Positions 21,707 through 62,541 are shown, numbered from the stretch's first letter. The stretch: 64,000 nucleotides of DNA from Macrostomum lignano (GCA_002269645.1 NIVC01000309.1:62001-126000); one strand, 5' to 3'. Made by a program: numbers and translations. Notes: generated by a model not told the origin, from the letters alone.

Positions 21707-21748
<42 letters not shown>

Positions 21749-42850: not shown

Positions 42851-45800
42851 ATGGCAACGAGTCTCGGCAGTTGGATAAAGGAGAAGTTTAAAAAGGCTGG
42901 GAGCTGCGCCGGTTGCTACAAGCGAATGTACTCTGCCAGCAAGTCCTCAGCAGAATCGGTCAGGCCAGCGGAGCCAGCCGAGATGCAGGAAGCTCAAAAA
43001 GCCAACATCGGCGACACTGACGAAAAGGACGACAAAAGCGACAAGTCGATTTTGATGTCGCTGATGAGCTTCGCAGATTCCACCACTGCTCACGGGTTCT
43101 CTCGGCTGGCCGGCTCCTCAGGTCGAACTGGCAGCGGCCTGTGGCTGCTGTTTCTTCTGGCGGCCTACGCGGGCCTCTGCTACCACACTGCCACGCTGGT
43201 CCTCAAGTTCCAGAGCCACCCGGTGTCCACCAGCCTGATTGCGGAGGTTCCATTCCAGTATCCGGATATCTACCTGTGCAGCGCCAATCCTGTAGGCTAC
43301 AGCCGCATCACCAAGTCCATCCAGAAGACGGCCGACTACGCCTACCTGTACGAGACCAATGTGACGGCTTACAACTTGAAGCTGCAGAGTGACGTCATCA
43401 ACAACAGTGCGGCAGATGTCAGCCTAGGAATCCACACCGCTTGGCTTAACTGGCAGACGGAGATTCTGTCTAGCAGGGTCAATCTGTCGAAAGGTGCGTC
43501 GAATTTTAAAAATTACATTACTGGTTGAGATTGACGAAATATGGAGTTTTTTTTCAAAAAAATCACTTTCCACAAAAATACAGACTTTTTCAACAGCTGC
43601 AGGATCTCTCTGCAAGGGGAAGAGTTCACAGGAAACTACACCACAGCGCTTACCTACAACCAGAGCCTGCAACCGATCCGAGTGCCCTGCGTCACCTGGT
43701 CTGAGGCCCGATCGCTCGTTTGCAACATCTCATCCACCATAGGAAACTTTGTGCCCAACCTGAATCACTCTTCCTGCCTGTACAACTCGAAGTTGGACGT
43801 TTTGATGACAAAGACTGTTCTGGGCAAGTGCAGCTCCTTAAACATGATTCTTAATCTGACGTCCAAGGATGCACTATTACTAAAAATTGCTTTCTGCCTA
43901 AAAACATTTGTAGGTGTTCCAAAATTAGACAGCAACTACACGATTGGCAAAGTAGTGCAAGGTCCGTTCTGCTTCCACAGATCTGGGAGTAGCGACAGCG
44001 GACTGGACATCAACTACTGCGGTGTGCCGTATTGCAGTGAGTTTTCTGTGCTTTTTTTGAGCTGAAAATTTTTCTTGTTTAACAATAGAACTACCAAGGA
44101 GGATTCCTCCTGACAGTGTACTCGTATTTTTGCACCGGAAGGGAGCATGGCTCTCGAAATTCTAAAACACGGGTTGAATTTTTGTTGCGCTCCTTCTGAA
44201 ACATGAATGAAGTCGCCAGCCCTCCAGACGGTCGAGATATTCAACGATTCTGCCAGAAGGTCGGATTTTTCCCATAAGCGCCAGTGTATTCAATACAACC
44301 TGTGCGCCAATTAGCACTGCGCCTCAGTGCAGCCTTGCCAAGCCTCCAAATTTCATGAGCATGTCGACCACATGTGTCTGCATCAGTTCGGACTTCGTTG
44401 GTCGCTGGCCTTCACCCAGACAGAGCTTCTGTCTGTAGACTTTACTAGACTAGATTATACTAGATTAGAACCAGACTAGAATAAGAATAGACTATACTAT
44501 ACTAGACTAGACTAGACTAGACTAGAATTAGACTAGACTAAAATAGAAATAGACTAGAACTAGACTAGACTAGGCTATACTAGACTAGACTAGACTAAAC
44601 TAGACTAGACTAGACTAGACTAGACTAGATTAGAATTAGACTAGACTAAAATAGAAATAGACTAGAACTAGACTAGACTAGGCTATACTAGACTAGACTA
44701 GACTAGACTAGATTAGAATTAGACTAGACTAAAACAGAAATAGACTAGAACTAGACTAGACTAGGCTAGACTAGACTAGACTAGACTAGACTAGACTAGA
44801 CTAGACTAGACTAGAATTAGACTAGACTAAAATAGAAATAGACTAGAACTAGACTAGACTAAGCTATACTAGACTAGACTAGACTAAACTAGACTAGACT
44901 AGACTAGACTAGACTAGATTAGAATTAGACTAGACTAAAATAGAAATAGACTAGAACTAGACTAGACTAGGCTATACTAGACTAGACTAGACTAGACTAG
45001 ATTAGAATTAGACTAGACTAAAACAGAAATAGACTAGAACTAGACTAGACTAGGCTAGACTAGACTAGACTAGACTAGATTAGACTAGACTAGACTAGAC
45101 TAGACTAGACTAGATTAGACTAGACTAGACTAGACTAGATTAGAATTAGACTAGACTAAAATAGAAATAGACTAGAACTAGACTAGACTAAGCTATACTA
45201 GACTAGACTAGACTAGACTAGACTAGACTAGACTAGACTAGATTAGAATTAGACTAGACTAAAATAGAAATAGACTAGAACTAGACTAGACTAGGCTATA
45301 CTAGACTAGACTAGACTAGACTAGATTAGAATTAGACTAGACTAAAACAGAAATAGACTAGAACTAGACTAGACTAGGCTAGACTAGACTAGACTAGACT
45401 AGACTAGACTAGACTAGACTAGACTAGAATTAGACTAGACTAAAATAGAAATAGACTAGAACTAGACTAGACTAAGCTATACTAGACTAGACTAGACTAA
45501 ACTAGACTAGACTAGACTAGACTAGACTAGATTAGAATTAGACTAGACTAAAATAGAAATAGACTAGAACTAGACTAGACTAGGCTATACTAGACTAGAC
45601 TAGACTAGACTAGATTAGAATTAGACTAGACTAAAATAGAAATAGACTAGAACTAGACTAGACTAGGCTATACTAGACTAGACTAGACTAGACTAGACTA
45701 GACTAGACTAGATTAGACTTGACTAGACTAGACTAGATTAGAATTAGACTAGACTAAAATAGAAATAAACTAGAACTAGACTAGATTAGGCTATACTAGA

Positions 45801-48800
45801 CTAGACTAGACTAGACTAGACTAGACTAGACTAGACTAGATTAGACTAGACTAGACTAGACTAGATTTGACTAGACTAGACTAGACTAGATTAGAATTAG
45901 ATAGACTAGACTAGATTAGAATTAGATAGACTAGACTAAAATAGAAATAGACTAGAACTAGACTAGACTAGAAAAGACTATACTAAATTAAAAATAGACT
46001 AGACTAGCGATTTGAAATTCCTACTGTAAAACCTTGCTGCAGGAAAACCCCCATCGGAAAATTCTCACAGACCCTTTCAAACGGTACTCAACCAAAAAGT
46101 TCCTAGAAATTTTCAATCCAGAATTAAAGTACACCCTGTCACGGTTTAGAGTAGAAAACCATAAACTGGTCCGCAAAGCAATCAAGGACTGCGAGACCAA
46201 GGATCCCTTACGAGAACCTACCCAATGTGGGAGTGGAAAGTGAAGTTCACTTCCTGTTAAATTGTAGTTGGAACTTACATAGGGCTCCCTGTGATAAATT
46301 CTTGAATAAACTTTCAAATTAAAAAACGTTACAGCAGACGGCAAAGTATTTTATCTAATAAAAATATAAAAAAATAAAAAATAAAAAAAAAATATTTGAT
46401 TACACTTGCCCCGATTGGGCCAGATGTGTAACCGACAGCTCAGCCGCAGCTATCTGAAGGCTGCGTACGGCTGTTCAGTCCAAGGACTGGGGGGTCGCCA
46501 CACGCACCCTCAATTACCCCAGCTAATGCTGGCACTTATTTTACAGCTGGGTGAACTGAAGCAATGCAGAGTTAAGTGTCTTGCTCGAGGACACTAAGTG
46601 TTCCAGTGAGATTGAGAATCGAACCCCCGACCTTCAAGTCGTGAGTCAGACGCTCTAACCACTTGGCTACAGTCCCCTTTTAGTTAATGACTCAATAAGA
46701 TCGAGACATATTGAAAATTTTAGCTAAGTTCATCAAATACCCGGTAAATGACACAGGCCGGAAGGCAACTGCCCTGAGGCTTTATATTGGTAGAGCAAAA
46801 ATATGCTCGAATTGCTCTGTTAGCGCACGAGATTTCGAAGGCTCCTACACCGCAGCTCCTCAATGAACTGTAAAACCGTCCCGCAGGCAAGGCCGAAAAC
46901 AATCTCGCCGACTGCTCAGCTCGCATCACCAGCGGCAGCTCAATCAGCACAACCTACATGGGCTCAGAGCAGACGTCGCGTTCTGGAAAATCCTGCCGAT
47001 CGTGGGAGGCCCTGGCGAATGGCAGCCTGGCTGCAGAGTTTCAAAATCTGAACTCCAGCTTCGAGTATCGCGTGTTCCTGCCCGACCCAGACTCGGTTGC
47101 CAGCGTTGGCAGCGGCTGTCGGAGCGCAGTCGTGATGTTCAAGGACCCCAGCAGTGGCCTGGGCTGGCAGTCCATCTACAAACTCATCATTGACAGCGAC
47201 GTTGAAAATGAGTCTTGGTGTCTGGTTGCAAAGCCGAATTATAAAAACCTCACGCTTGAGGGCTGCGCTGTTCCTGACTGCTGTGAGTAAGGCGTGGCAA
47301 AGTGGGGAGAGTGAAGTATACTCGTACATTATGCATATGTATACTCGTACTTTGTATAGAATATAGATATATGTCTAACTCGCTGGGCTGTAAACTGCTT
47401 GCATGACTTATTAAACTTATTAAACCTGTCTTACAGCAATGACGCAAGCAGCCTATTCAGCTATGTGTAGTGAGTGAAACAAGGCTAGAGTGCTTGTTGT
47501 AGTCGATAGTTGCCGAAAGCTGGCGATCAGTATGAATAGCGAATAGCGATAGCTGAATAGCGATCAGTATATTTATTGAATTAGTGAGCTGAGTCAGGGT
47601 GGTGGCTAAAGTCACACTATGCACATTTAATACCGTACGCACAAGGGTAGAGCTAGCAAAGTCACGCGGCGCAGCCGCTAACAACTACCCCAACACACAC
47701 GATAGTAGGCGCTGCCTACACTATTTACTAACCGCGGCTAACTTTGCTTAACTTGCAGCGCTAAACTAAACTGAGACTGACGTCCTAATATGAAATTACA
47801 ATGGCATAGAATGTCTACAAACAACATTCTGATTTGAAAACATCCTTTCAGCAACCTCGCTGAAGTGCATCTCAGGCCTGCTGCACCAGAAGTACGGACC
47901 TCACGTGCTCTCCAAGCTGGTCGGCCCGAGCTTGGACGTCACCCTGCTCGACTGCAGCTTCGGTGACAAGAAGTGCACACCGGCTGACTTCACTGCGCTG
48001 CACCATCCCTACTACGGCGCCTGCTACAAGTTCAACAGCGCTCCGTTCCTTCGAGATCTGACGCCGATGCAGCACGGTTTGCGTCCGCTCAGCCTGAAGC
48101 TGTTCGCCGACGATCACGACTACATGGGCAACCGGCGTCCGGACACCTTCACGGCCGTCCGAGCAGTCATGGGCGGCCCGTACAACACCGGAGACGTGAG
48201 CGAGCCGGCAGGTTTTCGCCTGTTCGTGATGCCGCCGGGACAGCATCCAAGCTCCCCGAATGCCATCATCATCTACACTGGGGCCCAGTCAACGGTCCAA
48301 ATTAAATTTGTTGAGAACACGGACCACACAACGAGAGGCCTGTGCAACCCCGTTGAGTCAACCATTGACTACAGCATCCACAGCTGGAGCCCGACTGTAC
48401 GTCGACCGAGGAACGAACAAAACTTCTCGTCACTAGATCCCTACTTTTTGTGAGTCAGACTCACACTTCTGACAAGAAACACTCGTACCATCCGTCAGAC
48501 TCAATCTGAAACACAGTTCTTATCAATTTTGCAAAACTTTAAACTCCAACTTACTCACGAAAATTTCAGTGAGTTCAACAATAGCTGGACGTTTGTAAGC
48601 GACCAGGAGTCTTGCGCCAACCACATTGTTATCGACGAATTTATTAGGAACTGCGGCTGTCTGCCCTACCTGTTGCCAATTCCGACCAAATACAGAAACA
48701 TCCCAGACTGCTTCTATCTGAACAGCTCCGACCCCGCTGGTATTGAAAAGTTGCAGCTGAGCGAGTTCTGCGCGGTCAAACTTTTCACAAGGATGGAGAC

Positions 48801-49962
48801 GCTCATAGAGAAGCATTGGGCTGCGTGCAAGCCCAACTGTCGAAAGCCTCACTACTCGGTGCAGCTGGTGAGCATTCGATGTTGCTTGGCATTGAATTCG
48901 AAAGACAATAATTCAAGAGCTTGGTAGTGAAGTCGTGTGGCTTGGATACGTTTAGATACGCTTGGACTACGATGTGCCCTAACGTCTATGACTCAAATTG
49001 TTACAGTTGTGGTTGCGTCTTGTTCAGGCCACAGATACTAAACTATAATTCGTTATATAGTATCTGTGATTCAGGCTTTTTGTATAGAATAACACGCCAT
49101 TCAATTCACATTCTACGAGCGTATGTTAATCCATCAGCTAGACAAATATACAATCGAGCTCATATTTCCGAAAGTCCGTTCTCTGAGTTAGCTTGTCCAT
49201 GCTACATCCAAGAACTACTTAAGTTGTCCATGCTACATCTACTCTACGTTCAGGATTTTTGGTTCTGCGGTAAAACCCATTGCTGATTTTATCAAATCAA
49301 TTTTTATCGACATTCAACCTTCTAGACGACTCAGCCGTGGCCCGACGCGTCCCATGGTTGCCACCCACTGGTTAAATCCAAGTGGTGACAATTACAAAAT
49401 GTCTATAAGAAGCTTGTTGCGACAACAGAACCAAAATTTGAATACTTCCAGTTGAGAACACCCAGTTATGTTTCCAACCTTCCAGACGACTCAGCCGTGG
49501 CCCGACGCGTCCCACGCCGCTTACAACGCGACGCTGCAGTCGCTCACTTCGCTGATCGGCTTCCCGAAGCAGGTGAGCCCCGACCAGGGCCTGACCATGC
49601 TCTACTACTCCTACCTGCAGGGTGAGCAGCTGATCCAGCCCAGCTCGGTGCAGCGCTTCGGCCAGTCGCTGGCCATGCGAGAGGCGGCTCGCAGCAACCT
49701 GGCCTGGATCCGGGTCGAGGCCGAGTACCCGATCGGGTCCGGCAGCGCCCAGGCCGACGGATATCCGGTGGAGAATCTGCTGGCCGAGATGGGCGGCATT
49801 CTGGGTCTGTACTGCGGCGTCTCGGTGCTGACCATCTGCGAGCTGATGGACCTGGTGGGCCGCCTGCTGCACCGGGCCGCACTGCGATCGCTTCGAGGAA
49901 GACAAGTTGACAGCATCGGTGACTCGTCGAGTAATTCGAAAGTCGCTTCAACCACAGTTTAG
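42851..49962 (+). CDS. DEG/ENaC channel subunit 1 with two kringle domains, ~924 aa: join(42851..43493, 43584..43823, 43914..44036, 46887..47282, 47852..48449, 48570..48867, 49486..49962)
   Basis: FADSTTAHGF (HG motif) + TM1; FQYPDIYLCSANP; LLDCSFGDKKC...DF...HPYYGACYKFN; Cys-rich thumb (SCANH..NCGCLPYLLP..CKPNCRKPHY); TM2 LLAEMGGILGLYCGVSVLTICEL. Exons 2-4 encode kringles. Phases are consistent (2775 nt = 925 codons); intron 2 is GC-AG. Confidence 0.9.
44444..46006. repeat. (CTAGA)n microsatellite with higher-order variant cassettes, in channel 1 intron 3
   Basis: Direct reading; the cassette CTAAAATAGAAATAGACTAGAACTAG...GGCTATACTAG recurs. Confidence 0.97.
46396..46677 (-). mobile_element. 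tRNA-derived SINE with a CORE/Meta-like central domain
   Basis: Minus strand: GGGGACTGTAGCCAAGTGG (A box), GGTTCGATTC (B box), then GTGTCCTCGAGCAAGACACTTAAC...CAGTTCACCCAGCTGTAAAAT, resembling recalled conserved SINE central domains. Confidence 0.8.
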
Positions 49963-51018
49963 CGACCGTATACCGAGATCCCGAAAACTCTGGGTTTGGG
50001 CCATAGACTCTACCGGGTAGCTGCTGCCAGTGCTTGAGAGCATTAGAAGCTACTGTCTATGGCCTTAACACCGCGGGGTTTTTCCTCTGCGACCTCGGAT
50101 GACCCTCAGAAAATAGCACGAGAGCGTCAAGGTGAAATCAAGCAACAACTGTACAAATTTCCCTAAAGGCATCTTGCTTTTGTATTGTAGCTAAACTTTG
50201 ATTCTTTGATTGAAGTTTGTGACATTTGAGTTATGAATCAAACTCAACTTTTTTGTACATTGTACGTGTTGTAATTAGCACCTAATTTGTAATTGCACTT
50301 ATTTCCGTTTTTTTTAAATTGCTTAAGAAAACTAAAGAATCCAAGTAAAATATGTATTATTCTTAGCTGCTATTTGAAATCACATATACAGGACAGCAAC
50401 TTTTGTGATCGTTTGCAATTTTTTATAAGCTGCCTTCTTGAGTTTTGCTGCGCGATATGCTTAATCAAACTTTTAATTGCTTTTGTCTTGCCTAGAAATG
50501 TGCTAAATATTTTAATTGTTGTTGTAAAATAAACTAGCTACGCAAAAATGTGTATTCCTGGCATATTGTTCGTAAACAATATAATATTGACTACTAGAAA
50601 AGTTCTTTAATAATTTGATTGTCGTTAACTTGATCAATGAAAGAAAATTCCGGGTGATAATGTAGAAATTGGCGGGCTCTATGTTGGGGACAGGCTGGGT
50701 GTTTGAGCTGAGCAGAATGTCTATGGTAGAACGCTTCATTTTGTTTCTGATTCGCTGATGGAGTTCAGTGTTGATTAGGAGTTGTCAAAAAATGAAGCGG
50801 ACTTTTTGGGTACACATAATGATGGTAAAATGATGGAAAAAATAAATTCTATCAATGCTCTTCTATCAACTAACGACAACTAACGGAATTTTCCAGCCAA
50901 ATTGAGCCTTGCAATTGAGTAGTTGAAGACTTGCTGTTCATTGTCTATTTGAAAAATTCTAAAATATGTGATCCTATTTTAGTATCATAGCTAGTTCCTA
51001 ATCAGCTTAGTCTCGTTA

Positions 51019-53276
51019 ATCAGCTAGTATCAGCTAGTATCAGCTAGTATCAGCTAGTATCAGCTAGTATCAGCTAGTATCAGCTAGTATCAGCTAGTAT
51101 CAGCTAGTATCAGCTAGTATCAGCTAGTATCAGCTAGTATCGGCTAGTATCAGCTAGTATCGGCTAGTATCAGCTAGTATCAGCTAGTATCAGCTAGTAT
51201 CAGCTAGTATCAGCTAGTATCAGTTAGTATCAGCTAGTATCAGCTAGTATCAGCTAGTATCAGCTAGTATCAGCTAGTATCAGCTAGTATCAGCTAGTAT
51301 CAGCTAGTATCAGCTAGTATCAGTTAGTATCAGCTAGTATCAGCTAGTATCAGTTAGTATCAGCTAGTATCAGCTAGTATCAGCTGGTATCAGCTGGTAT
51401 CAGCTAGTATCAGCTAGTATCAGCTAGTATCAGCTAGTATCAGTTAGTATCAGCTAGTATCAGCTAGTATCAGCTGGTATCAGCTGGTATCAGCTAGTAT
51501 CAGCTAGTATCAGCTAGTATCAGCTAGTATCAGTTAGTATCAGCTAGTATCAGCTAGTATCAGTTAGTATCAGCTAGTATCAGCTAGTATCAGCTAGTAT
51601 CAGCTAGTATCAGCTAGTATCAGCTAGTATCAGCTAGTATCAGCTAGTATCAGCTAGTATCAGCTAGCATCAGCTAGTATCAGCTAGTATCAGCTAGTAT
51701 CAGCTAATATCAGCTAGTATCAGCTAGCATCAGCTAGCATCAGCTAGTATCAGCTAGTATCAGCTAATATCAGCTAGTATCAGCTAGTATCAGCTAGTAT
51801 CAGCTAATATCAGCTAGTATCAGCTAGTATCAGCTAGTATCGGCTAGTATCAGCTAGTATCAGCTAGTATCAGCTAGTATCAGCTAGTATCAGCTAGTAT
51901 CAGCTAGTATCAGCTAGTATCAGCTAGTATCAGCTAGTATCAGCTAGTATCAGCTAGTATCAGCTAGTATCGGCTAGTATCAGCTAGTATCAGCTAGTAT
52001 CAGCTAGTATCAGCTAGTATCAGCTAGTATCAGCTAGTATCAGCTGGTATCAGCTAGTATCAGCTAGTATCAGCTAGTATCAGCTAGTATCAGCTAGTAT
52101 CAGCTAATATCAGCTAGTATCAGCTAGCATCAGCTAGTATCAGCTAGTATCAGCTAGTATCAGCTAATATCAGCTAGTATCAGCTAGTATCAGCTAGTAT
52201 CAGCTAGTATCAGCTAGTATCGGCTAGTATCAGCTAGTATCAGCTAGTATCAGCTAGTATCAGCTAGTATCAGCTAGTATCGGCTAGTATCAGCTAGTAT
52301 CAGCTAGTATCAGCTAGTATCAGCTAGTATCAGCTAGTATCAGCTAGTATCGGCTAGTATCAGCTAGTATCAGCTAGTATCAGCTAGTATCAGCTAGTAT
52401 CAGCTAGTATCAGCTAGTATCAGCTAGTATCAGCTAGTATCAGCTAGTATCAGCTAGTATCAGCTAGTATCGGCTAGTATCAGCTAGTATCAGCTAGTAT
52501 CAGCTAGTATCAGCTAGTATCAGCTAGTATCAGCTAGTATCAGCTAGTATCAGCTAGTATCAGCTAGTATCAGCTGGTATCAGCTGGTATCAGCTAGTAT
52601 CAGTTAGTATCAGCTAGTATCAGCTAGTATCAGTTAGTATCAGCTAGTATCAGCTAGTATCAGCTAGTATCAGCTAGTATCAGCTAGTATCGGCTAGTAT
52701 CAGCTAGTATCAGCTAGTATCAGCTAGTATCAGCTAGTATCGGCTAGTATCAGCTAGTATCAGCTAGTATCAGCTAGTATCAGCTAGTATCAGCTAGTAT
52801 CAGCTAGTATCAGCTAGTATCAGCTAGTATCAGCTAGTATCAGCTAGTATCAGCTAGTATCAGCTAGTATCGGCTAGTATCAGCTAGTATCAGCTAGTAT
52901 CAGCTAGTATCAGCTAGTATCAGCTAGTATCAGCTAGTATCAGCTAGTATCAGCTAGTATCAGTTAGTATCAGCTAGTATCAGTTAGTATCAGCTAGTAT
53001 CAGCTAATATCAGTTAGTATCAGCTAGCATCAGCTAGTATCGGCTAGTATCAGCTAGTATCAGCTAGTATCAGCTAGTATCGGCTAGTATCAGCTAGTAT
53101 CAGCTAGTATCAGCTAGTATCGGCTAGTATCAGCTAGTATCAGCTAGTATCGGCTAGTATCAGCTAGTATCAGCTAGTATCAGCTAGTATCAGCTAGTAT
53201 CAGCTAGTATCAGCTAGTATCAGCTAGTATCAGCTAGTATCAGCTAGTATCAGCTAGTATCAGCTAGTATCAGCTA
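51019..53276. repeat. 10-bp satellite (ATCAGCTAGT)n, ~2.25 kb, between channel genes 1 and 2
   Basis: Direct reading. Confidence 0.98.
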
Positions 53277-53894: not shown

Positions 53895-56800
53895 ATGTCT
53901 GATAAAAAAATGAGCAAAGAAGAAGAAGTCCATCAAGACAACCGAGACGAAAACGACGAGGAACGCAAAGCGTCGGTCTCGGTGTCGCTGTTGAGCTTCG
54001 CAGATTCCACCACTGCTCACGGGTTCTCTCGGCTGGCCGGCTCCTCAGGTCGAACTGGCAGCGGCCTGTGGCTGCTGTTTCTGCTGGCGGCCTACGCGGG
54101 CCTCTGCTACCACACCGCCACGCTGGTCCTCAAGTTCCAGAGCCACCCGGTGTCCACCAGCCTGATTGCGGAGGTTCCATTCCAGTATCCGGACATCTAC
54201 CTGTGCAGCGCCAATCCTGTAGGCTACAGCCGCATCACCAAGTCCATCCAGAAGACGGCCGACTACGCCTACCTGTACGAGACCAATGTGACGGCTTACA
54301 ACTTGAAGCTGCAGAGTGACGTCATTAACAACAGTGCGGCGGATGTCAGCCTAGGAATCCACACTGCTTGGCTTAACTGGCAGTCACTAATTCTATCTAC
54401 CAGGGTTAACATGTCACCGGGTGAGGCAGTGCTTTGGTTGTTCATTGTATGCCATTTTCACTGAAGATTACACTATTCATTCAGGCAGTTTAACAGTTTG
54501 ATTGATGCACCTTGAAGATGTTGATTTGATCTCGTGGTGCACGAAAGTAAGAATTCATCATTTAAAGACAATTATTACTCATGTTGTCAATTGGTAGCTT
54601 TTGATTTAAGTTGCTACTTATTGCAAAACCAAAAACATTGCACCTGATCGTGCTAAAATTGTCTGATTTACAGTGGGTAAAATGTTAGTTTTCCAAGTAA
54701 ATAATTTGATTCAATCAGTTCCGCACGCTTCCTTGTTTGAGCAGCTTGAGCCATAGGGGCTGAGCACACTGCTTGTTGAGTGATCTGTTGACGCTTAAAA
54801 AACTAAATTTGCAGGGCTACCTGCAGAGGGGAGCATAATTTCTGCTACAGTTTTTTGGTCTCAAGCGAACAGGAAATTTCAACTCACAGCAGATGCGATT
54901 AACAGTAGTTAAGGTCCGACTGTGAATTTTTCATAAAGTTTGCCGGGCGCTACCCAAAAAGTTTTCGATGTCTTATTCAAACTAGAAGAGGTCTCAGGAA
55001 AGTCTGCTCAGCCCGTACCTTGCCTAAAAAGTCAAGTTGTTTGTCAAAGTTCTTATGCTACTTTCTGCTGCATTACATTTCAAATTTGACTTATTAATAA
55101 CTTACTAAACAGAGTTGCGTCTCCTTACTTTGAGCACAATACCATAGCATATTGGGTTTCACTAGATCAAGCATCTATATACCTGCAGACCTCCTCAACA
55201 GCTGTCGGATCTCTCTGCATGGCCAGGAGTTCACAGGAAATTACACCACAGCGCTAGCCTACAACCAGAGCCTGCAGCCGGTCCGAATGCCCTGCGTCAC
55301 CTGGTCGGAGGCCCGATCGCTCCTGATCAATATTTCATCCTATATTGGCAACCTGGTGCCCGACCTCAGCCACTCCTCGTGTCTGCACAACTCCAGTGTA
55401 AACATCTCGCTGATCAAGGCTGTGTTAGGCAAGTTCTTAAGCTAAAGTTTCTGTTATTTGTTCGTTAAAAATGCTCCGATTCAATAATTAGCGATCAGAA
55501 ATTCAATCGAATCACACAGGCTCCTACGACGGTGACCAGAGTAGCTACACCATTGGCAGAGTCTTTCAAGGCCCGTTCTGCTTTCACAGATCCGCTAACA
55601 GCAGCAGTGGACTGGACATCAACTACTGCGGCGTGCCGTATTGCAGTGAGTTGCTAACTGGATAATCTGCCTGAAGCTTGCATGGCTTCCTATGAAATTG
55701 CAGTGGTAGCCTGTGAGTTTCTCTAGCTTAGTTTCTTAAACAATGACAAATGGCTCTCAGTAGTAATCAAATGGCCAGGTGCAGCAGTTCCCATGTCTAT
55801 AATTCAGATGCAGATTCAAGTGTAGATTAGTTGGATTTCATTCTCGCAAATACAGATGCTATGAACTCTTATACCCGGATATCCTTGACTTGCGCAGACA
55901 AGGCCAACAACACTCTATCCGGCTGCACCTCATTCAACTCGAACATATCCGTGAACACGGTTTTCATGGGCAGCGTGAGGACGTCACGATCCGGCAGAAC
56001 CTGTCAGCCCTGGCAAGCCCTGGTTAACGGCAGTCTCAGCACACAGTTCCGCAACCTCGATCCGGTCATGGAGTTCCGCGTGTTCCTGCCCGACCCTGAA
56101 TCTGTTGCGAATGTTGGAAGCGATTGCCGCAGCGCCGCAGTGATGTACAGGGACCCCAGAAAGGGACTGGGCTGGCGACCCATCACTGAGCTCATCATTG
56201 ATGGACAGGTGACCCAAGAGCCTTGGTGTCTAGTTGAGAAGCCAGGCTACAAGAATCTGACAATGGAGAGCTGCAGCGTGCCCGACTGCTGTGAGTTCCT
56301 AATGACTATTTTAAAGGGACAGCACGGTCCTCATATTCTAAAAGTACGTAGAAAAACTTACTTTTTAAAAATCCAAATTGCAGCATCTTCGCTGAAGTGC
56401 ATCTCAGGCCTGCTGCACCAGAAGTACGGACCTCACGTGCTCTCCAAGCTGGTCGGTCCGAGCTTGGACGTCACCCTGCTCGACTGCAGCTTCGGTGACA
56501 AGAAGTGCACACCGGCTGACTTCACTGCGCTGCACCATCCCTACTACGGCGCCTGCTACAAGTTCAACAGCGCTCCGTTCCTTCGAGATCTGACGCCGAT
56601 GCAGCACGGTTTGCGTCCGCTCAGCCTGAAGCTGTTCGCCGATGATCACGACTACCTGGGCAACCGGCGTCCGGACACCTTCACGGCCGTCCGAGCAGTC
56701 ATGGGCGGCCCGTACAATCTCGGAGAGGCGAGTGACCCGGCTGGATTCAACTTGATCCTGATGCCGCCGGGAGCGTATCCGGGCACCTCACATGCCATTC

Positions 56801-59643
56801 CAATTTACACGGGGGCTCGGTCCACTGTTCGTATGAGCTACTTCGAGGACACGGACAACACAACAAGAGGTTTTTGCAACCCTCTGAAGTCAAGCACCAA
56901 CTACAGTATCTACAGCTGGAGCCCGACTGTGCTTCGACCGAGATACGAGCAGAGCTTTTCGATGCTGGATCCGTACTTTTTGTGAGTTTGGGCAACTTTT
57001 GCTCTAAAAATGTTATTTTTGAGTCATTGCTGGTAAAAAACCTACCGTGTAAATGTAAAAAGCCGTTTTACTTTTTATATGTTGTGAGATTGTATTTCCG
57101 TTGATTTGTTTAAAAAATGAAAATGCAAATTCTTTCTTTTCGCAAATGATATCGATATCGCTTTTGACGAGCTAAATGGGAATTTGGACAATCAAAACGG
57201 GACGCAATAGACATTCAAGCCAGGCCAGAGACTACACAACCATAGAATGTGAAATGGACAATCAAAATGAAAAAAAGCCATTCAAAACGCGAATTCGCCC
57301 AATGTAATGTATTTTTTATATCTCGGGCCACTGGAATATTTAAAAGTGAAGAAAGTGCTACAGGAATTGGTGGCGCCATTGAATGGGATCGCTTTCAGGC
57401 CAAAGACGAGCAAGCAGGGGATGGAGGGACAGAGAGCTATAAAATCTCAGTCCAATTCCCGTTTTGAATCACTTTTTACCATATTGAAGGTCCAAAGTTA
57501 TAGTCTATGGCCAAGCCTCCCTCAGTAGACTCTGCTAAACTGTTTAAGTCCATGACTAGGGTGTGATCTGTGGCCTGGCTTGAATGTCTATGGCGTCCCG
57601 TTTTGATTGTCCAAATTCCCATTTATATCGCCAAAAGCGATAATACGAAGCTCATTGTCTAGCAATTTGACGATCATTGTTTATTTGTTACAATATCGCT
57701 TACAATAGTCGTTTTTAATCACTGCCTTCAACTTTCTACTTCGACATTCCAGCGAATTCAACAGCAGCAGCTGGGTCTTCGACGACAACCAGGAGTCTTG
57801 CGCCAATCTCGCCGTTGTCGAAGAGTTCGTTGGAAAGTGCGGCTGCCTGCCGTATCCGCTGCCAATTCCGACAAAGTACATCAACATTCCCGACTGCTTT
57901 ACTTTGGAGAACTCCAGTTCAGCCGGCATCGACCAGCTGTTGACAACCGAGGCCTGTGCCATAAACTTGTTCAACCAGTTTGAGACGCTCACTGAAACCT
58001 TCTGGGCGAAGTGCAGGCCGAACTGCAGAAAGCCAAAATACTTGACGCAGCTGGTGAGTCAGGCTTAAGACCAGTTGCCCAGAGATTCTAACAAGAAAGA
58101 AACAAACAAGAAAGCAACTGACGAGGTGACTAGGTAGTGTATAGGTTTTTTTAGGTAATTATTTTTACTATGGTGCTTTCAATAATTTGATATGACTTGG
58201 CCTTTTCTTATAACCCTGTTGATATTCGTAGAGCCTTTGTTTAAAAACTCAGGGTTCTCTGTTAATTCAAAATTCCACATGCATGTCCGGTGCCTAAAAA
58301 TCATAAAATTGGCATACGATCGTATATTAGCCTTTTGTTCTAAACGAAAAGCTCTACGAATATCGATAGAGCTACAAGAAAGGCAAATCATGTCAAAAGA
58401 TGAACTTCGGGTCTGCTTCCAATAAAAATCAATTACAATTTTTTGTGCTGAAAAAATTAAATCCTCCATTCTCCGTAATGTTTTTTTCGGTAAAACCTGC
58501 CTCTTGAACATCTCCTTCTTCTCCATCTCGTCCTTCTACTTGAGAATTTACACTTATAACTAGATGATTGATGAATGCTTCGTGTTAAGACTGACCAAGG
58601 TAAGAAAGAACTTTTGAGTCAAGAATCGCTTGAGAAGTTTGTTTAACGTCACGAACATCAAACAATACGTGTTCGACATTCATTTCAGTGCAAAAGTGCA
58701 TTCTTACTTTGACTTAGCACCAGGGGGTTCTGGGAATCCGGATACAGCGGGGAGGCGTTGTCGCCCATTCCGCTAACCCCTGGCAACCACAGGCAGCTGG
58801 TGCTGCGGTGTCGCGCAGGGAGATCCGGTTGTGCCGGTGTTCGCTGCGCGGTCCCCCTCCGGTCCCCTCGCTCGCCCGGCTGCCCTAGGCTAGCGGATGA
58901 GCTGGCAGAGATTCTCGGGCCTGAAAACGGGTCGAGGTAGATGAGCCTGTCCTGAGTAGAGGCGGGGCATTCTCAGATGAAGTGCTCTGCATTTTCAACA
59001 ATGGAAAGGCGCTAGGAGGGCGCTAGCACACTTCTCCCTGTGCTTGGTTGCCACCTACTGGTTAAATCCAAGTGGTGACAATTACAAAATGTCTATAAGA
59101 AGCTTGTTGCGACAACAGAACCAAATTTTGAGTATTTCCAGCTGAGAACAACTAGTTTTGTTTCCAACCTTCCAGACGACTCAGCCGTGGCCCGACGCGT
59201 CCCACGCCGCTTACAACGCGACGCTGCAGTCGCTCACTTCGCTGGTCGGCTTCCCGAAGCAGGTGAGCCCCGACCAGGGCCTGGCCATGCTCTACTACTC
59301 CTACCTGCAGGGTGAGCAGCTGATCCAGCCCAGCTCGGTGAAGCGCTTCAGCCAGTCGCTGGCCATGCGAGAGGCGGCTCGCAGCAACCTGGCCTGGATC
59401 CGGGTCGAGGCCGAGTACCCGATCGGGTCCGGCAGCGCCCAGGCCGACGGATATCCGGTGGAGAATCTGCTGGCCGAGATGGGCGGCATTCTGGGTCTGT
59501 ACTGCGGCGTCTCGGTGCTGACCATCTGCGAGCTGATGGACCTGGTGGGCCGCCTGCTGCACCGTGCCGCGCTGCGGTGGATGCGCCGCAGTCAGGTTGG
59601 CAGCTCCAACGCCAAGCTGAAGGAGCCGTCAACGAATTTATAG
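53895..59643 (+). CDS. DEG/ENaC channel subunit 2 with two kringle domains, ~883 aa: join(53895..54420, 55189..55428, 55520..55645, 55898..56290, 56384..56981, 57753..58053, 59176..59643)
   Basis: Same motifs and exon structure as gene 1. Phases are consistent (2652 nt = 884 codons); intron 2 donor AG|GCAAGT; ends EPSTNL. Confidence 0.9.
57158..57640. mobile_element. TA-flanked MITE (Tc1/mariner-like) with ~82-bp imperfect TIRs, in channel 2 intron 5
   Basis: TCGCTTTTG...AAATGGGAATTTGGACAATCAAAACGGGACGC.ATAGACATTCAAGCCAGGCCA (57158-57240) matches the reverse complement of 57559-57640. TA at 57156-57157 and 57641-57642. Confidence 0.85.
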
Positions 59644-60497
59644 CAATCAGATGCTATCAAAACTCGGTAGCATCAGCTATGAAGACTAAAGATGCGTGTA
59701 TTTTTTTTCATTCTAACCCCTCTTTTCTTCTCACTCGCACGTCGAGGTATAACATTTTAACCAACGTGAATCCAGCACTTTTAAGCTGACTATCTGATTT
59801 CACAAGCATGTGATCATGTATCTCGTCTATAACATTTTCACCGGTACTCGTAACGGATCTAGAAGTTACCATTGCATCAGGTTTTAATATTCGCATTCTA
59901 CAGTAAATTATTTGAGTGCCTATGATCTGTTGCCGAGGGGCTTCATGAGTTTGTGGGCTTTGCGTGGATGCGCTTTGCATGTTTGTGCTGTGTCACCTTT
60001 GCCATAACCTTATAAAGAAACTTGATTTTTCTGCCCGAAGCCGCACCTGTCAGTTACTGATTGCTATAAAACTTCTTCTTTGCTTGTATGATTGCACTAT
60101 ACAACTAGGAAGATGCGTAAAATAAAGGAACAAACATTCTCTTTGAATAAAATTATCGTTTGGTGTATTAGCTACTGGGCACCGATCTCAAATATGCTGC
60201 AAATGCTTATCCAGCTATTCTAAAGCTACTATAGAGCTTTGCATAGATTTAGTGGGATGGAAGAAGTTCGTGGGGGGGGGGCATTGGGAAAGCTAAGGCC
60301 AATGAAAAAGGAAACCAGCTCTTGTGTTTTCTTCCCTCAGCATCTCTGTGGGACTTACAAGCGGCTACACTATTCTGTAGTCAATGGCAACCAGCCGCCT
60401 ACTCAACTTTGGCTCCTAAATAAAGGATAAATTTAAGAGTTAGCCCCCGCCGTCGAAAGGCCCCTCACCGAAAAAGTAAAGCAATAAAAGCATCGAA

Positions 60498-62541
60498 ATG
60501 AGAGAAGATAAAATGCCAGACACGCCTCAAGTTGAGAATAGCGGCAAACAACGAAGCGATTCCTCAGAAGCCGACAAGACAGACGAACGCGACGCGTCGG
60601 TCTCGGTGTCGCTGCTGAGCTTCGCAGATTCCACCACTGCTCACGGGTTCTCTCGGCTGGCCGGCTCCTCAGGTCGAACTGGCAGCGGCCTGTGGCTGCT
60701 GTTTCTGCTGGCGGCCTACGCGGGCCTCTGCTACCACACTGCCACGCTGGTCCTCAAGTTCCAGAGCCACCCGGTGTCCACCAGCCTGATTGCGGAGGTT
60801 CCATTCCAGTATCCGGATATCTACCTGTGCAGCGCCAATCCTGTAGGCTACAGCCGCATCACCAAGTCCATCCAGAAGACGGCCGACTACGCCTACCTGT
60901 ACGAGACCAACGTGACAGCTTACAACTTGAAGCTGCAATTCGATGTTGAAAACAATTCGGCTGCTGAAGTAAGCCGGGGAATATATACTGGTTGGTTGAA
61001 CTGGCAGTCAGTGATATTGTCCAGCAAGATTGACTCGGCTCGAGGTAAGGGTACAGAATTTGTGTCTTTATACGTAGTACTCATAGCATATTGCAGTCAG
61101 TTTAAGCTTGGAAGCAGTTGACTTTATTCCAGAGTGGCGGAAATTTATAGTACACGCATACAATAGAACAATATAGAACACTGGAATGGCTACATGTAGT
61201 TCAGGATTAATGAAAAGTTCACAAAATAAAATTCAGTCTGCAAAGGTATCTGATCACTGATCCTTCTCTATGCTTCTCTATACTTCATACCTATCTTCCT
61301 CTTCCAAGCTCATGTCGGTCCTTTTTGTCGGTACTTCCTAGAAGGATAAAAAGGTCTTGAAGACGCAGGAGATTGAGCAACAACAGGTCTGTACTGCCCT
61401 GTTCGGGGTCGATGATTAGCATTTGGTAGCTACGGAAAGGATTTTGTTATGGCTCCACCAGTCCAACCTTTGGGCCATAGACTATAGATAGCAATAGTAG
61501 AGAGTAGCGTTTTGTCTCTCTGGATTAAAGTGAACTCCTTCTTGCTCCTTAAATTGTAGCTCGTAACATGTAACACATTGTGCCCTAACTTGCATGTACA
61601 GAGGACTATGTTTATAGATCAATGTTCATAGAGAAGGGCCTAGCCTACACTAATAAACGCAGTAACTTTAGATAAAACTTTCAAAGGAAAAACTTTATGA
61701 TGTTTACCAAAGAATACTGAGGTTACAATGGGATAAACGGAACAACAGATCACACAAAGTGCGCCAAGTGTAACCTTTTTTATACAAAAATGTTCCTCGA
61801 AATACATGAAAAAAAATTTATGTTTCACATTTATCGTCATTACTATATTTTGCAGACCTTCTGAACAGCTGTCGGATCTCTCTGCATGGCCAGGAGTTCA
61901 CAGGAAACTACACCACAGCGCTCACCTACAACCAGAGCTTGCAGCCGGTCCGAGTGCCCTGCCTCACCTGGTCGGAGGCCCGATTGCTTGTGAACAATAT
62001 TTCATCCGCCATTGGCAATCTGGTGCCCAAACTGAATCACTCTTCGTGCGTCTACAACTCCAGTCTAAACATCTCGCTGATCAAGGATGTGTTAGGTAAG
62101 TTCCGTTTCTCTGGAAATGTTCAAAGTCCAAGAACACCGGGCGGCTTTTACAGAAGCAGTCAACATCGCTTTAGTTGGTTTGCTCAAAGGCTTTAAACAA
62201 CTGATTTCCTATTACTTCAACGTCCCGCTCTTCTGATGCTAATTATCGGCAGTGGCAACAGGCTAATTAATATTTGATTTTGTTTCATATGCTCACCTTC
62301 TTGTCATTTGGCAGTCTCTTTTTCAACCCCAATCTCGCTTCTCCACTGCATCGCTTTGTCACACAACTAAAAAAATTCTGCGCTCTCATTCACAGTAAGA
62401 AAACGTTTACATTCTCAGGTTCCAGCATCTCAGACAACAGCTACATCATTGGCAGCGTGCTGCAAGGCCCGCTCTGCTTCCACAGATCTGCCAGCAGCGG
62501 CAGCGGACTGGACATCAACTACTGCGGCGTTCCGTATTGCA
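60498..62541 (+). CDS. DEG/ENaC channel subunit 3, 5' part only (N-terminus, TM1, first kringle): join(60498..61044, 61856..62095, 62419..62541); expected to continue beyond the window
   Basis: Homologous to exons 1-3 of genes 1 and 2 with the same phases. Exon 4 is not found before 64000. Confidence 0.85.

What the first reader, a model, noticed from the sequence alone, without database searches (positions are those of the whole stretch)
42851..62541. Kringle-domain DEG/ENaC channels: a tandem family with a candidate new extracellular sensor module
Seen: between the post-TM1 motif (YPDIYLCSANP) and the palm motif (LLDCSFGDKKC), exons 2-4 encode two six-cysteine units. Unit 1: CRISLQGEEFTGNYTT...PCVTWSE...NHSSC...GPFCF...NYCGVPYC. 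Unit 2: C...FMGSVRTSRSGRTCQPW...DCRS...EPWC...ESCSVPDC. Established: these follow the kringle pattern C..G..Y.G..S.T.SG..CQ.W...NYCRNP...PWC...YC.IP.C (plasminogen, HGF, ROR, Kremen). This position is the finger domain, which holds the peptide-binding site in FaNaC and the protease-released inhibitory tract in ENaC. I know of no described kringle-bearing DEG/ENaC (novelty needs a database check). Inference: trimeric cation channels gated or modulated by protein ligands or proteases via up to six kringles, expanded as a receptor family.
Basis: partly seen in the sequence, partly recalled or inferred. Interest (0 to 1): 0.92.

Follow-up and report, generated by a model that had tools for sequence, protein, structure and literature searches.

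The report
Flatworm sodium channels carrying two kringle-like modules
Three neighbouring genes of the flatworm Macrostomum lignano encode DEG/ENaC-type ion channel subunits with two much-altered kringle modules built into the extracellular "finger". No paper I could find describes this domain combination, and its function is untested.

Summary
The window (Macrostomum lignano, contig C309) carries three tandem, same-strand, seven-exon DEG/ENaC genes. g1 (924 aa) and g2 (883 aa) are complete. g3 (894 aa) continues past the window end. Exons 2-4 encode two six-cysteine units (250 aa) between TM1 and the palm, where FaNaC has its finger and ENaC its GRIP domain.

**Unit 2** is a real but divergent kringle:
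- A profile search of PDB returns only kringles.
- hhalign gives 97% probability and score 59, against a maximum of 20.5 for shuffled controls.
- It stays below Pfam's cut-off (25.6 vs 34.3 bits), and the fold match is not significant.

**Unit 1** reaches kringle only transitively, through a sister M. lignano clade that has a WSC domain nested inside unit 1.

Both units are about 120 aa from first to last cysteine, against about 80 in a normal kringle. They evolve under purifying selection (dN/dS 0.2-0.34) and are bounded by phase-1 introns. The lysine-binding pocket is not conserved, and there are no conserved furin sites.

No paper found describes the architecture. UniProt already auto-names fragments of these genes "Kringle domain-containing protein". 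All homologues found with the insert are from M. lignano.

Verdict: a new variant of a known channel family. The ligand- or protease-gating idea is untested.

The parts
42851..49962 (+). Gene g1: complete 7-exon DEG/ENaC subunit gene, 924 aa. Exons: 42851-43493, 43584-43823, 43914-44036, 46887-47282, 47852-48449, 48570-48867, 49486-49962 (stop included).
   Evidence: Hand-built splice model. Pfam ASC scores 160.7 bits in two stretches. UniProt fragment A0A1I8G9S9 (P0004) joins exons 1-4; its exon 2/3 junction differs slightly from mine. The start codon is uncertain: P0004 starts at the Met of codon 45.
43584..44036 (+). g1 unit 1 (K1). It spans exon 2 (43584-43823), a 90-nt GC-AG intron and exon 3 (43914-44036). 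It has six cysteines in kringle order, plus one extra.
   Evidence: hhalign of the unit 1 family against kringle: 90.7%, score 39.1. Clade A alone gives only 17.6%, score 22.9. Clade A against clade B unit 1 gives 98.8%. There is no Pfam hit.
46887..47282 (+). g1 unit 2 (K2), encoded by the single exon 4.
   Evidence: Pfam Kringle scores 22 bits against a cut-off of 34.3. All hits listed for the profile search of PDB are kringles. hhalign gives 97%, E 9.6e-11.
53895..59643 (+). Gene g2: complete 7-exon DEG/ENaC subunit gene, 883 aa. Exons: 53895-54420, 55189-55428, 55520-55645, 55898-56290, 56384-56981, 57753-58053, 59176-59643.
   Evidence: Pfam ASC scores 147 bits. UniProt fragment A0A1I8GPM0 (P0002, 99% identical) joins exons 4 and 5 with the same junction.
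55189..55645 (+). g2 unit 1 (K1). It spans exon 2 (55189-55428), a 91-nt GC-AG intron and exon 3 (55520-55645).
55898..56290 (+). g2 unit 2 (K2), encoded by exon 4.
   Evidence: Pfam Kringle scores 25.6 bits against a cut-off of 34.3. The AF2 model has pLDDT 75. The top five Foldseek PDB hits are all kringles, but with E 0.12-0.9.
60498..62541 (+). Gene g3, first three exons: 60498-61044, 61856-62095 and 62419-62541. These encode TM1 and unit 1. Exons 4-7 lie beyond the window at contig C309:130595-134116. The full protein is 894 aa.
47852..48449 (+). g1 exon 5 (palm/beta-ball, starting with ...LLDCSFGDKKC). It marks the downstream edge of the insert. The g2 equivalent is 56384-56981.
   Evidence: Pfam ASC profile positions 145-295. 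It aligns to FaNaC 199-252 and ENaC gamma 252-292.

Best explanation
**What it is (largely shown).** These are three tandem paralogues of a Macrostomum lignano DEG/ENaC (ASC-family) cation channel subunit. The core has what a working channel needs:
- the cytoplasmic HG motif;
- TM1;
- palm, beta-ball and cysteine-rich thumb;
- TM2 with a G-V-S selectivity-filter triplet.

Inside the finger subdomain sit two tandem, kringle-derived, disulfide-rich modules, K1 and K2. Together they span 250 aa and carry 9-10 N-glycosylation sequons. Each module has the six cysteines of a kringle in the usual order. Each also has an extra ~23-residue structured excursion between Cys3 and Cys4, and longer N-terminal loops.

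The modules are bounded by phase-1 introns, the usual mark of shuffled extracellular modules. They have been kept under purifying selection since the paralogues split.

**How it most likely works (inferred).** A trimeric channel would display up to six of these modules at the top of the extracellular domain. That is next to the finger-thumb interface, which controls gating in ASIC, FaNaC and ENaC. I propose that they are a built-in docking surface for an extracellular macromolecule, either protein or glycoconjugate. Occupancy would shift the finger-thumb coupling and so gate or tune the pore.

The paralogues share almost identical pore, TM and palm exons, which are homogenised by gene conversion. 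They differ most in K2 and in the thumb exon. That pattern fits subunits with one common pore and different recognition surfaces.
For: **Channel identity**
- Pfam ASC scores 160.7 and 147 bits.
- phmmer against PDB hits FaNaC, ENaC and ASIC only.
- HG motif TTAHG and TM2 ...GGILGLYCGVSVLT... are present.

**Position of the insert**
- g2 19-122 aligns to FaNaC 57-160, and g2 452-507 to FaNaC 199-252.
- For ENaC gamma the matching stretches are 31-111 and 252-292.
- The insert therefore falls where the finger/GRIP domain lies.

**Kringle origin of K2**
- The K2 profile against PDB gave 69 matches at E<=10. The 60 shown are all kringles (HGF 6.6e-7, tPA K2, prothrombin, ROR1/2, apo(a), plasminogen), with both the N- and C-terminal motifs matched in order.
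- hhalign against eight Pfam-validated kringles gives 97%, E 9.6e-11, over kringle columns 5-78.
- The shuffled-control maximum is 20.5 against an observed 59.4.
- WSC and thumb negative controls score 12 or less.
- UniProt names fragments of these genes 'Kringle domain-containing protein'.
- The top five Foldseek hits for the AF2 model are kringles.

**Kringle origin of K1**
- Family profile against kringle: 90.7%.
- Clade B alone: 93.4%.
- Clade A against clade B: 98.8%, score 97, shuffle maximum 22.7.
- 12 of 13 weak PDB hits are kringles.

**Real coding exons**
- dN/dS is 0.20-0.34, at dS 0.33-1.5.
- Splice phases are conserved.
- Independent gene models join the same exons.

**Mosaic divergence**
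- dS is 0.01-0.02 in exon 7, 0.8-1.5 in K2, and above 1.9 in exon 6, the thumb.
Against: - Neither unit reaches Pfam's Kringle gathering score: K2 gives 25.6 and 22 bits against 34.3, and K1 gives no hit.
- The K2 model matches kringles only at E 0.12-0.9 and TM <= 0.46.
- The K1 model was unusable, with pLDDT 45.7.
- K1 of the window genes alone gives only 17.6% hhalign probability.
- The kringle lysine-binding trough is not conserved. In the alignment, R71/W72/Y74 equivalents are T/L, M/L and S/G.
- No ligand is known and nothing here tests binding or gating.
- The K2/thumb divergence could simply reflect where gene conversion stopped, rather than selection for diverse recognition.
- There is no transcript evidence for g1-g3 beyond database gene models.
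- Three M. lignano DEG/ENaCs tested in oocytes gave no response to the FMRFamide-type and other neuropeptides applied (PMC9234716). I could not establish whether they are these genes.
Confidence: 0.55

Rival explanations
1. Built-in extracellular tether for mechanosensation. The kringle modules, and in the sister clade the nested WSC domain, would anchor the finger to extracellular matrix or glycocalyx. Force on the tether would then gate the channel. This would be a one-polypeptide version of the MEC-4/MEC-10 complex with its separate matrix partners.
For: - The sister clade carries a WSC domain above Pfam's cut-off, nested inside K1.
- From my own knowledge, WSC domains occur in the yeast Wsc1 wall-stress sensor and in polycystin-1.
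- Kringle plus WSC is the Kremen ectodomain pairing, and Kremen is among the weak K1 hits.
- DEG/ENaCs include well-known mechanosensory channels (general knowledge).
Against: - The window's own genes lack the WSC domain.
- No matrix partner has been identified.
- Nothing in the sequence separates a tether from a soluble-ligand receptor.
Confidence: 0.2
2. A lineage-specific structural elaboration of the finger with no ligand of its own. The modules would only stabilise, glycosylate or sterically tune the finger. That could set pH or peptide sensitivity, assembly preferences or trafficking. The real stimulus (protons, small peptides, or constitutive activity) would act on the conserved core.
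For: - Finger regions are the most variable part of DEG/ENaC ectodomains. The gap between aligned blocks is about 40 aa in FaNaC, 140 in ENaC and 330 here.
- The canonical kringle binding pocket is degraded (alignment).
- There are 9-10 N-glycosylation sequons in the insert.
- dN/dS of 0.2-0.34 shows constraint but no sign of diversifying selection.
Against: - Keeping about 250 aa of disulfide-rich sequence under purifying selection in at least four clade A gene types and several clade B types suggests more than padding.
- The clade B copies also gained a second binding-type domain.
Confidence: 0.2
3. An ENaC-like autoinhibitory insert released by proteolysis. The kringle region would play the role of the GRIP inhibitory tract and be clipped by a convertase or serine protease to open the channel.
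For: - The insertion site is the same as the ENaC GRIP domain.
- A furin/kexin-type convertase gene lies 25 kb upstream in the window.
- Minimal RxxR strings occur in K2 of g2 and g3.
Against: - No R-x-K/R-R site occurs anywhere in the inserts.
- The RxxR strings are absent from g1. They sit inside the conserved kringle core motif (S-R-S-G-x-x-C), not in flanking linkers.
- Disulfide-locked modules would not leave after a single cut.
- The convertase is separated from the cluster by other genes, and its proximity may be coincidental.
Confidence: 0.05
4. Not a real feature. Either the cysteine pattern resembles a kringle by chance, or exons 2-4 belong to another gene or are an annotation artefact.
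For: - Both units are below Pfam's threshold.
- The Foldseek matches are not significant.
- I had no RNA data.
Against: - Profile-profile scores lie 11-21 sd above the shuffled controls.
- Only kringles are retrieved from PDB.
- The exon order, strand and phases are conserved in three tandem genes, in a 36-40% identical paralogue, and in a 20-30% identical clade B.
- Independent gene models join TM1, the units and the palm in one protein, for example PAA82974.1 at 1052 aa.
- dN/dS is below 0.35.
Confidence: 0.03

Closest known systems
DEG/ENaC channels with solved structures (FaNaC 7yvb/8on7, ENaC 6wth/9blr, ASIC1 2qts/6vtk)
   Same: - Pfam ASC is well above its cut-off.
- The HG motif, TM1, post-TM1 motif, palm (LLDCSF...), cysteine-rich thumb and TM2 with a G-x-S filter are all present.
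   Different: About 330 residues lie between the two aligned blocks that flank the finger. FaNaC has about 40 and ENaC about 140. 250 of these residues are two kringle-derived modules.
ENaC GRIP domain (finger insertion with furin-excised inhibitory tracts)
   Same: A large lineage-specific insertion at the same place in the ectodomain. The position would allow control of finger-thumb coupling.
   Different: The fold type is different. No conserved furin sites are present. Proteolytic release is not supported.
[quoted passage not shown]
   Same: A precedent for a DEG/ENaC subunit fused to an extra cysteine-rich extracellular module. EGAS is likewise functionally uncharacterised: no currents were seen in the oocyte acid screen.
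   Different: The module type differs (EGF against kringle). I did not compare the EGAS sequences or the position of their extra module.
Canonical kringle domains (plasminogen, HGF, tPA, prothrombin, ROR1/2, Kremen; PF00051)
   Same: - Six cysteines in the same order.
- The Y-x-G...S-x-S-G-x-x-C-x-x-W, C-R and P-W-C motifs, and the terminal C-x-[VI]-P-x-C motif.
- Significant profile-profile similarity.
- Phase-1 flanking introns.
   Different: - 117-122 residues from Cys1 to Cys6, against about 78-82.
- About 23 extra residues between Cys3 and Cys4.
- The CRNPD motif is degenerate: CRS in K2 and C-[LV]-[YH]-N in K1 of the window genes.
- The lysine-binding trough is not conserved.
- Both are below Pfam's gathering score.
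- The host protein is an ion channel rather than a protease, growth factor or receptor kinase.
M. lignano sister clade (PAA82974.1, PAA47210.1, PAA86857.1, A0A1I8IV52 and others)
   Same: The same layout: TM1, K1, K2, palm, TM2. Unit 1 is homologous at 98.8% hhalign probability.
   Different: - A WSC domain (PF01822, 39-43 bits in three of the proteins, near or below the 27.8-bit cut-off in two others) is nested between Cys3 and Cys4 of K1.
- K2 is split over several exons.
- Identity to the window genes is 20-30%.
- These genes lie on other contigs.
Kremen1 ectodomain (kringle-WSC-CUB)
   Same: The kringle and WSC domain types are combined in one ectodomain. Kremen is among the top weak hits for K1.
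   Different: - In Kremen the domains are sequential, not nested.
- Kremen has no channel moiety.
- The pairing applies only to the sister clade, not to the window genes.

Membership tests
DEG/ENaC (Pfam ASC, PF00858) | Profile match above the curated cut-off, spanning TM1 to TM2 | tested here: met
   160.7 bits (g1) and 147 bits (g2) against a cut-off of 23.6. The best stretch reaches profile position 454 of 455, and exon 1 covers positions 1-112. The match is split by the insert.
DEG/ENaC (Pfam ASC, PF00858) | N-terminal HG motif and a G/S-x-S selectivity filter in TM2 | tested here: met
   TTAHGFSRL and GGILGLYCGVSVLT are present in all three genes. They align to FaNaC AHG and GISVLT.
DEG/ENaC (Pfam ASC, PF00858) | Trimeric, amiloride-sensitive cation conductance | not testable with these tools
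   Needs heterologous expression and electrophysiology.
Kringle (PF00051 / PROSITE kringle) | Pfam profile match at or above the gathering score (34.3 bits) | tested here: not met
   K2 scores 25.6 bits (g2) and 22 bits (g1). K1 gives no hit at E<=10. None of these exons appears in the genome-wide PF00051 scan at E<=0.01, while 51 canonical kringle exons elsewhere in the genome pass the cut-off.
Kringle (PF00051 / PROSITE kringle) | Homology to kringles detectable by profile methods and specific to kringles | tested here: met
   - K2: all 60 PDB matches shown are kringles, best E 6.6e-7. hhalign gives 97% and score 59.4, against a shuffle maximum of 20.5.
- K1 family: 90.7%, score 39.1, against a shuffle maximum of 19.0.
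- K1 of the window clade alone: only 17.6%, score 22.9, against a shuffle maximum of 17.0.
- Negative controls (WSC, thumb): 13.9 or less.
Kringle (PF00051 / PROSITE kringle) | Six conserved cysteines; disulfides 1-6, 2-4, 3-5 | tested here: inconclusive
   The number and order of the cysteines are met in both units, and they align to the kringle cysteines.
Kringle (PF00051 / PROSITE kringle) | Compact triple-loop fold of about 80 residues | tested here: inconclusive
   - Size is not met: 117-122 aa from Cys1 to Cys6.
- AF2 model of K2: pLDDT 75, pTM 0.69.
- The top five Foldseek PDB hits are kringles, but with E 0.12-0.9, TM <= 0.46 and rmsd 7-10 A.
- AF2 model of K1: pLDDT 45.7, unusable.
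Kringle (PF00051 / PROSITE kringle) | Lysine-binding pocket: an anionic pair, a cationic residue and an aromatic trough (W62, F64, W72). This is present in ligand-binding kringles only. | tested here: not met
   In the hhalign alignment, W62 and one Asp are kept. F64 becomes L, R71/W72 become T/L and M/L, and Y74 becomes S/G. The residue numbering is from my own knowledge of plasminogen kringle 4.
WSC domain (PF01822) | Profile match above the cut-off (27.8 bits) | tested here: not met
   There is no WSC hit in g1 or g2. The feature is met only in three sister-clade proteins: P0007 at 39.1, P0027 at 41.4 and P0015 at 43.0 bits.
ENaC-type proteolytic activation (GRIP) | Conserved furin/convertase sites flanking an inhibitory tract in the finger | tested here: not met
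   There is no R-x-[KR]-R in any insert. The RxxR strings are not conserved across g1-g3 and lie inside the kringle core motif.

The most novel reading that the evidence does not exclude
These subunits would form receptor-channels in which a macromolecule opens a DEG/ENaC pore directly. The macromolecule (a protein, a glycoconjugate or the matrix itself) would bind the finger-embedded kringle modules, or the kringle-plus-WSC modules in the sister clade. That would be a gating modality not known in this family. The tandem paralogues would share one gene-converted pore and carry different K2/thumb recognition surfaces, giving a small chemosensory or adhesive-contact receptor repertoire.
Probability: 0.25. 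Interest if true: 0.85.

Novelty: new variant of a known kind. Interest (0 to 1): 0.6.

Why it matters
DEG/ENaC channels are gated by protons, small peptides, force or proteolysis. In each case the stimulus acts through the finger-thumb region of a single conserved ectodomain. Here a binding-type protein module has been spliced into that region and kept under selection. A sister clade has gone further and nested a second domain (WSC) inside the first.

If the modules bind something, this would be a natural experiment. It would show how a foreign recognition domain can be coupled to a DEG/ENaC gate, and it could serve as a template for engineered ligand-gated channels.

If they do not bind anything, the genes still show three things:
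- exon shuffling of phase 1-1 modules into an ion channel;
- how far a kringle can be expanded and still be recognisable;
- a clear mosaic of gene conversion, with pore exons homogenised and K2 and thumb exons old and divergent.

M. lignano is a transgenic, regenerating laboratory model, so expression mapping and knock-down are feasible.

Tried and rejected
- **Word-indexed homologue search, g2.** The search with full-length g2 found nothing. Known fragments fall outside the length filter and share few 5-mers with the query.
- The representative search and the structure predictor do not accept spliced proteins. I used contiguous exon translations and exact substrings instead. The unit 1 model therefore started from the UniProt g1 fragment (P0004), which differs from the window at about 10 residues.
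- **Exhaustive phmmer.** The query was K2, the read-through intron and exon 5. It gave 22 hits. Every hit that carries the insert is from M. lignano. The hits I inspected from the rest (P0017-P0023) are ordinary short-finger DEG/ENaCs, and P0012 is an unrelated repeat protein.
- **Word-indexed homologue search, sister clade.** A second search with a sister-clade protein also gave only M. lignano hits. Their precomputed Pfam domains are WSC and ASC, with no Kringle.
- **MAFFT with exon-level partial rows.** The first attempt misaligned the clade B half-domains. It was replaced by full substrings, which still misplace Cys3.
- **AF2 of unit 1.** pLDDT was 45.7, so I did not send the model to Foldseek.
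- **Foldseek of the unit 2 model.** Kringles rank first but the matches are not significant. I treat this as weak support only.
- **PDB hmmsearch with the unit 1 profile.** Best E was 0.052, which is not significant on its own.
- **Considered and rejected:** a separate gene nested in a channel intron, pseudogenes, chance cysteine patterning, and ENaC-like furin release. Reasons are given under the rival explanations.
- **Oocyte-tested genes.** I could not map the three M. lignano genes tested in PMC9234716 (Mlig049925.g2, Mlig051885.g1, Mlig041003.g1) onto these loci.

Full report
**Where the window comes from.** The window is eukaryotic. It corresponds to contig C309:62001-126000 of a 764-Mb assembly in 5269 contigs. 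The best database matches to its proteins are all from the flatworm Macrostomum lignano. One example is UniRef100_A0A1I8GPM0, which is 99% identical to part of gene 2.

**Checking the observation.**
- Stop-to-stop ORFs on the + strand show a repeated series of conserved coding blocks.
- I enumerated donor/acceptor pairs that keep the frame, and kept those that agree in all three copies. This gave two complete seven-exon genes: g1 (42851-49962, 924 aa) and g2 (53895-59643, 883 aa).
- It also gave the first three exons of g3 (60498-62541). I fetched the next 14 kb of the contig and found g3 exons 4-7, for a protein of 894 aa.
- All introns are GT-AG, except intron 2 of g1 and g2, which has the usual GC-AG variant donor (GCAAGT).
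- The finding's start is the first ATG of g1, and its end is the last base of g3 exon 3.
- Every quoted peptide is present. Unit 1 is encoded by exons 2+3, and unit 2 by exon 4.
- Independent gene models support several junctions. UniProt fragment P0004 joins exons 1-4 of a g1-type copy. P0002 joins exons 4 and 5 of g2 at exactly my junction.

**The channel.**
- Pfam ASC matches g1 and g2 at 160.7 and 147 bits against a cut-off of 23.6. The match falls in two stretches separated by the insert.
- phmmer against PDB sequences finds only FaNaC, ENaC, ASIC and a related thermal receptor.
- The HG motif (TTAHG) and a TM2 with a G-V-S triplet at the selectivity-filter position are present in all three genes.
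- g2 residues 19-122 align to FaNaC 57-160, and residues 452-507 to FaNaC 199-252. With ENaC gamma the blocks are 31-111 and 252-292.
- The extra sequence therefore sits where FaNaC has its short finger and ENaC its GRIP domain.

**Are the units kringles? Unit 2.**
- Pfam's Kringle model matches only weakly, at 25.6 and 22 bits against a gathering score of 34.3.
- A profile of four unit 2 sequences searched against all PDB sequences matched 69 sequences at E<=10. The 60 shown are all kringles (HGF 6.6e-7, tPA kringle 2, prothrombin, ROR1/2, apo(a), plasminogen, urokinase).
- In those hits the N-terminal Y-x-G...S-G-x-x-C-x-x-W block and the C-terminal P-W-C...C-x-V-P-x-C block match in the right order.
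- I wrote eight kringle sequences from memory and confirmed each one against Pfam (up to 113 bits). Profile-profile comparison with them gave 97% probability, E 9.6e-11 and score 59.4, over kringle columns 5-78.
- Two hundred column-shuffles of the kringle alignment gave mean 10.9, sd 2.3 and maximum 20.5. The reversed alignment gave 12.4.
- Unrelated cysteine-rich controls (the WSC domain and the channel's own thumb) gave 12.3 or less.
- AlphaFold2 on a 10-sequence alignment gave pLDDT 75 and pTM 0.69, with the inserted segments predicted confidently.
- The top five Foldseek PDB hits are kringles. However, E is 0.12-0.9 and TM is 0.46 or less, so the fold test is only weakly supportive.
- UniProt's automatic name for fragments of these genes is 'Kringle domain-containing protein'.

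**Are the units kringles? Unit 1.**
- Unit 1 has no Pfam hit.
- The exhaustive phmmer search uncovered a second M. lignano clade that is 20-30% identical. Examples are PAA82974.1 (1052 aa, full length), PAA47210.1 and PAA86857.1. It has the same TM1, unit 1, unit 2, palm layout.
- In that clade a WSC domain (PF01822, 39-43 bits in three of the proteins) is nested between Cys3 and Cys4 of unit 1.
- That clade keeps the kringle C-R-x-P motif (SRCRSPPG, ARCRTPPG), which g1-g3 have lost.
- With the WSC segment cut out, clade B unit 1 matches the kringle profile at 93.4%, score 42.8, against a shuffle maximum of 19.3.
- The window's unit 1 matches clade B unit 1 at 98.8%, score 97, over its whole length, against a shuffle maximum of 22.7.
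- On its own, the window's unit 1 reaches only 17.6%, score 22.9, against a shuffle maximum of 17.0.
- The combined family profile gives 90.7%.
- Twelve of thirteen weak PDB hits are kringles (neurotrypsin, Kremen1, tPA, plasminogen, ROR2), but the best E is 0.052.
- The AlphaFold model of unit 1 was unusable, with pLDDT 45.7.
- I conclude that unit 1 is a degenerate kringle, shown by transitive homology and not directly.

**How the units differ from a textbook kringle.**
- Cys1 to Cys6 spans 117-122 residues, against about 78-82.
- Both units have 34-36 residues between Cys3 and Cys4, where kringles have 11-12.
- The two units match each other at 82% hhalign probability. This fits a tandem duplication after the loop had expanded.
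- Part of the lysine-binding pocket survives: the PWC tryptophan, one invariant Asp, and a second acidic residue in three of the four sequences. The aromatic and cationic residues near the C-terminus are replaced (alignment; residue roles are from my own knowledge). No lysine-type ligand can be inferred.

**Are the exons real and functional?**
- Introns 1-4 are all phase 1 in all three genes. Unit 1 and unit 2 are therefore symmetric 1-1 modules, as expected for shuffled extracellular domains. Skipping them would keep the reading frame.
- Nei-Gojobori estimates between the paralogues give dN/dS of 0.20-0.33 for unit 1 (dS 0.33-0.82) and 0.20-0.34 for unit 2 (dS 0.82-1.49). Both are clearly under purifying selection.
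- Synonymous divergence differs about 100-fold between exons of the same gene pair. It is 0.01-0.02 in exon 7 (TM2), 0.13-0.33 in exons 1 and 5, and above 1.9 in exon 6 (thumb).
- The simplest reading is that gene conversion keeps the pore, TM and palm exons nearly identical, while unit 2 and the thumb stay old and divergent.

**Family size and spread.**
- The genome holds three copies each of the g1, g2 and g3 types, on C309, C1668, C2460 and C2758. There are also two copies of a paralogue whose unit 2 is 38% identical (C1816/C1862, protein P0003), and one copy with stop codons on C190.
- The repeated near-identical copies fit the known polyploid nature of this genome (my own knowledge).
- Clade B genes lie on other contigs and have unit 2 split over several exons.
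- Every homologue found with the insert is from M. lignano. This held in the search of 1.84 billion representative proteins and in a word-indexed search of 5.8 billion.
- The genome has at least 51 canonical kringle exons elsewhere, so donor domains were available.

**Comparison with what is known.**
- Full-text searches returned no paper describing such a channel. The term pairs were kringle with ENaC, degenerin or acid-sensing ion channel, and WSC domain with amiloride-sensitive.
- M. lignano DEG/ENaCs were included in one phylogeny. Three were tested in oocytes and did not respond to the FMRFamide-type and other neuropeptides applied (PMC9234716). I could not tell whether they are these genes.
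- The ENaC-style protease idea has no sequence support. There is no R-x-K/R-R site in any insert, and the minimal RxxR strings are neither conserved nor exposed.

**Verdict.**
- The genes are bona fide DEG/ENaC subunits carrying two expanded, degenerate kringle-derived modules in the finger.
- This is a new variant of a known channel family. It is visible in automatic database annotation but undescribed, and so far seen only in M. lignano.
- The mechanism I favour is a built-in docking surface whose occupancy acts on finger-thumb coupling. This is an inference from position, module type and the divergence pattern.
- A matrix-tether role and a purely structural role remain live alternatives.

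Noticed in passing
window 15283-17268 (- strand): A single 661-aa open frame encodes a furin/kexin-type proprotein convertase: S8 pro-domain, Peptidase_S8 at 170.6 bits and a P-domain at 70.2 bits. It lies about 25 kb upstream of the channel cluster. This is noteworthy because ENaC is furin-activated, but the channel inserts have no conserved furin site.
   Followed up: partly
g1/g2/g3 coding exons (window 42851-62541 and C309:130595-134116): Synonymous divergence between the paralogues ranges from 0.01-0.02 (exon 7, TM2) to above 1.9 (exon 6, thumb) within the same gene pairs. This points to exon-specific gene conversion of the pore, TM and palm exons, while unit 2 and the thumb escape it.
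   Followed up: yes
other contigs of G000 (e.g. C440:489841-497706, C2218, C665, C632); proteins PAA82974.1, PAA47210.1, PAA86857.1: A sister clade of M. lignano DEG/ENaCs has a WSC domain nested between Cys3 and Cys4 of kringle-like unit 1. The domain pair (kringle plus WSC) is otherwise known from Kremen. Precomputed Pfam lists these proteins as WSC + ASC only.
   Followed up: partly
window 43824-43913 (g1 intron 2) and 56291-56383 (g2 intron 4): Both short introns (90 and 93 nt) are in frame and free of stop codons. Retention would insert 30-31 residues without truncating the protein. The g1 insertion would include two cysteines. g2 exon 4, intron 4 and exon 5 read as one 384-aa ORF (55831-56985).
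   Followed up: no
window 43824, 55429 vs 62096: Intron 2 uses a GC-AG donor (GCAAGT) in g1 and g2, but a GT donor (GTAAGT) in g3.
   Followed up: no
window 44436-46007, 51019-53276, 62716-63626: There are three large satellite arrays inside or between the channel genes. TAGAC x ~305 lies in g1 intron 3. ATCAGCTAGT x ~226 lies between g1 and g2. A 31-mer x ~29 lies in the 6-kb intron 3 of g3. Many further arrays lie upstream, at about 2.3-3.2, 4.0-4.7, 19-20.5, 22.1-25.3, 26.2-27.4 and 33-38.2 kb.
   Followed up: partly
G000 C1668:211521-244808, C2460:10562-10951, C2758:12515-12904, C190:239711-240025: Near-identical extra copies of the g1, g2 and g3 types exist elsewhere in the assembly. On C1668 they appear to form an inverted pair of g1/g2 copies. 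They are probably homeologous or haplotype copies. One more distant copy on C190 has in-frame stop codons and is probably a pseudogene.
   Followed up: no
window 21154-22254 (- strand) and 1315-1737 (+): One open frame encodes a PDZ domain (PDZ_6 at 42.8 bits) followed by a long poly-Q/poly-A tract. Another gives a weak, sub-threshold DDE_3 transposase-like match (21.6 against 28.6 bits).
   Followed up: no
window 42851 vs 42983: The g1 start codon is uncertain. The UniProt fragment of the g1 type starts at the internal Met (MQEAQKAN...), 44 codons downstream of the first ATG. g2 and g3 have much shorter N-termini.
   Followed up: no
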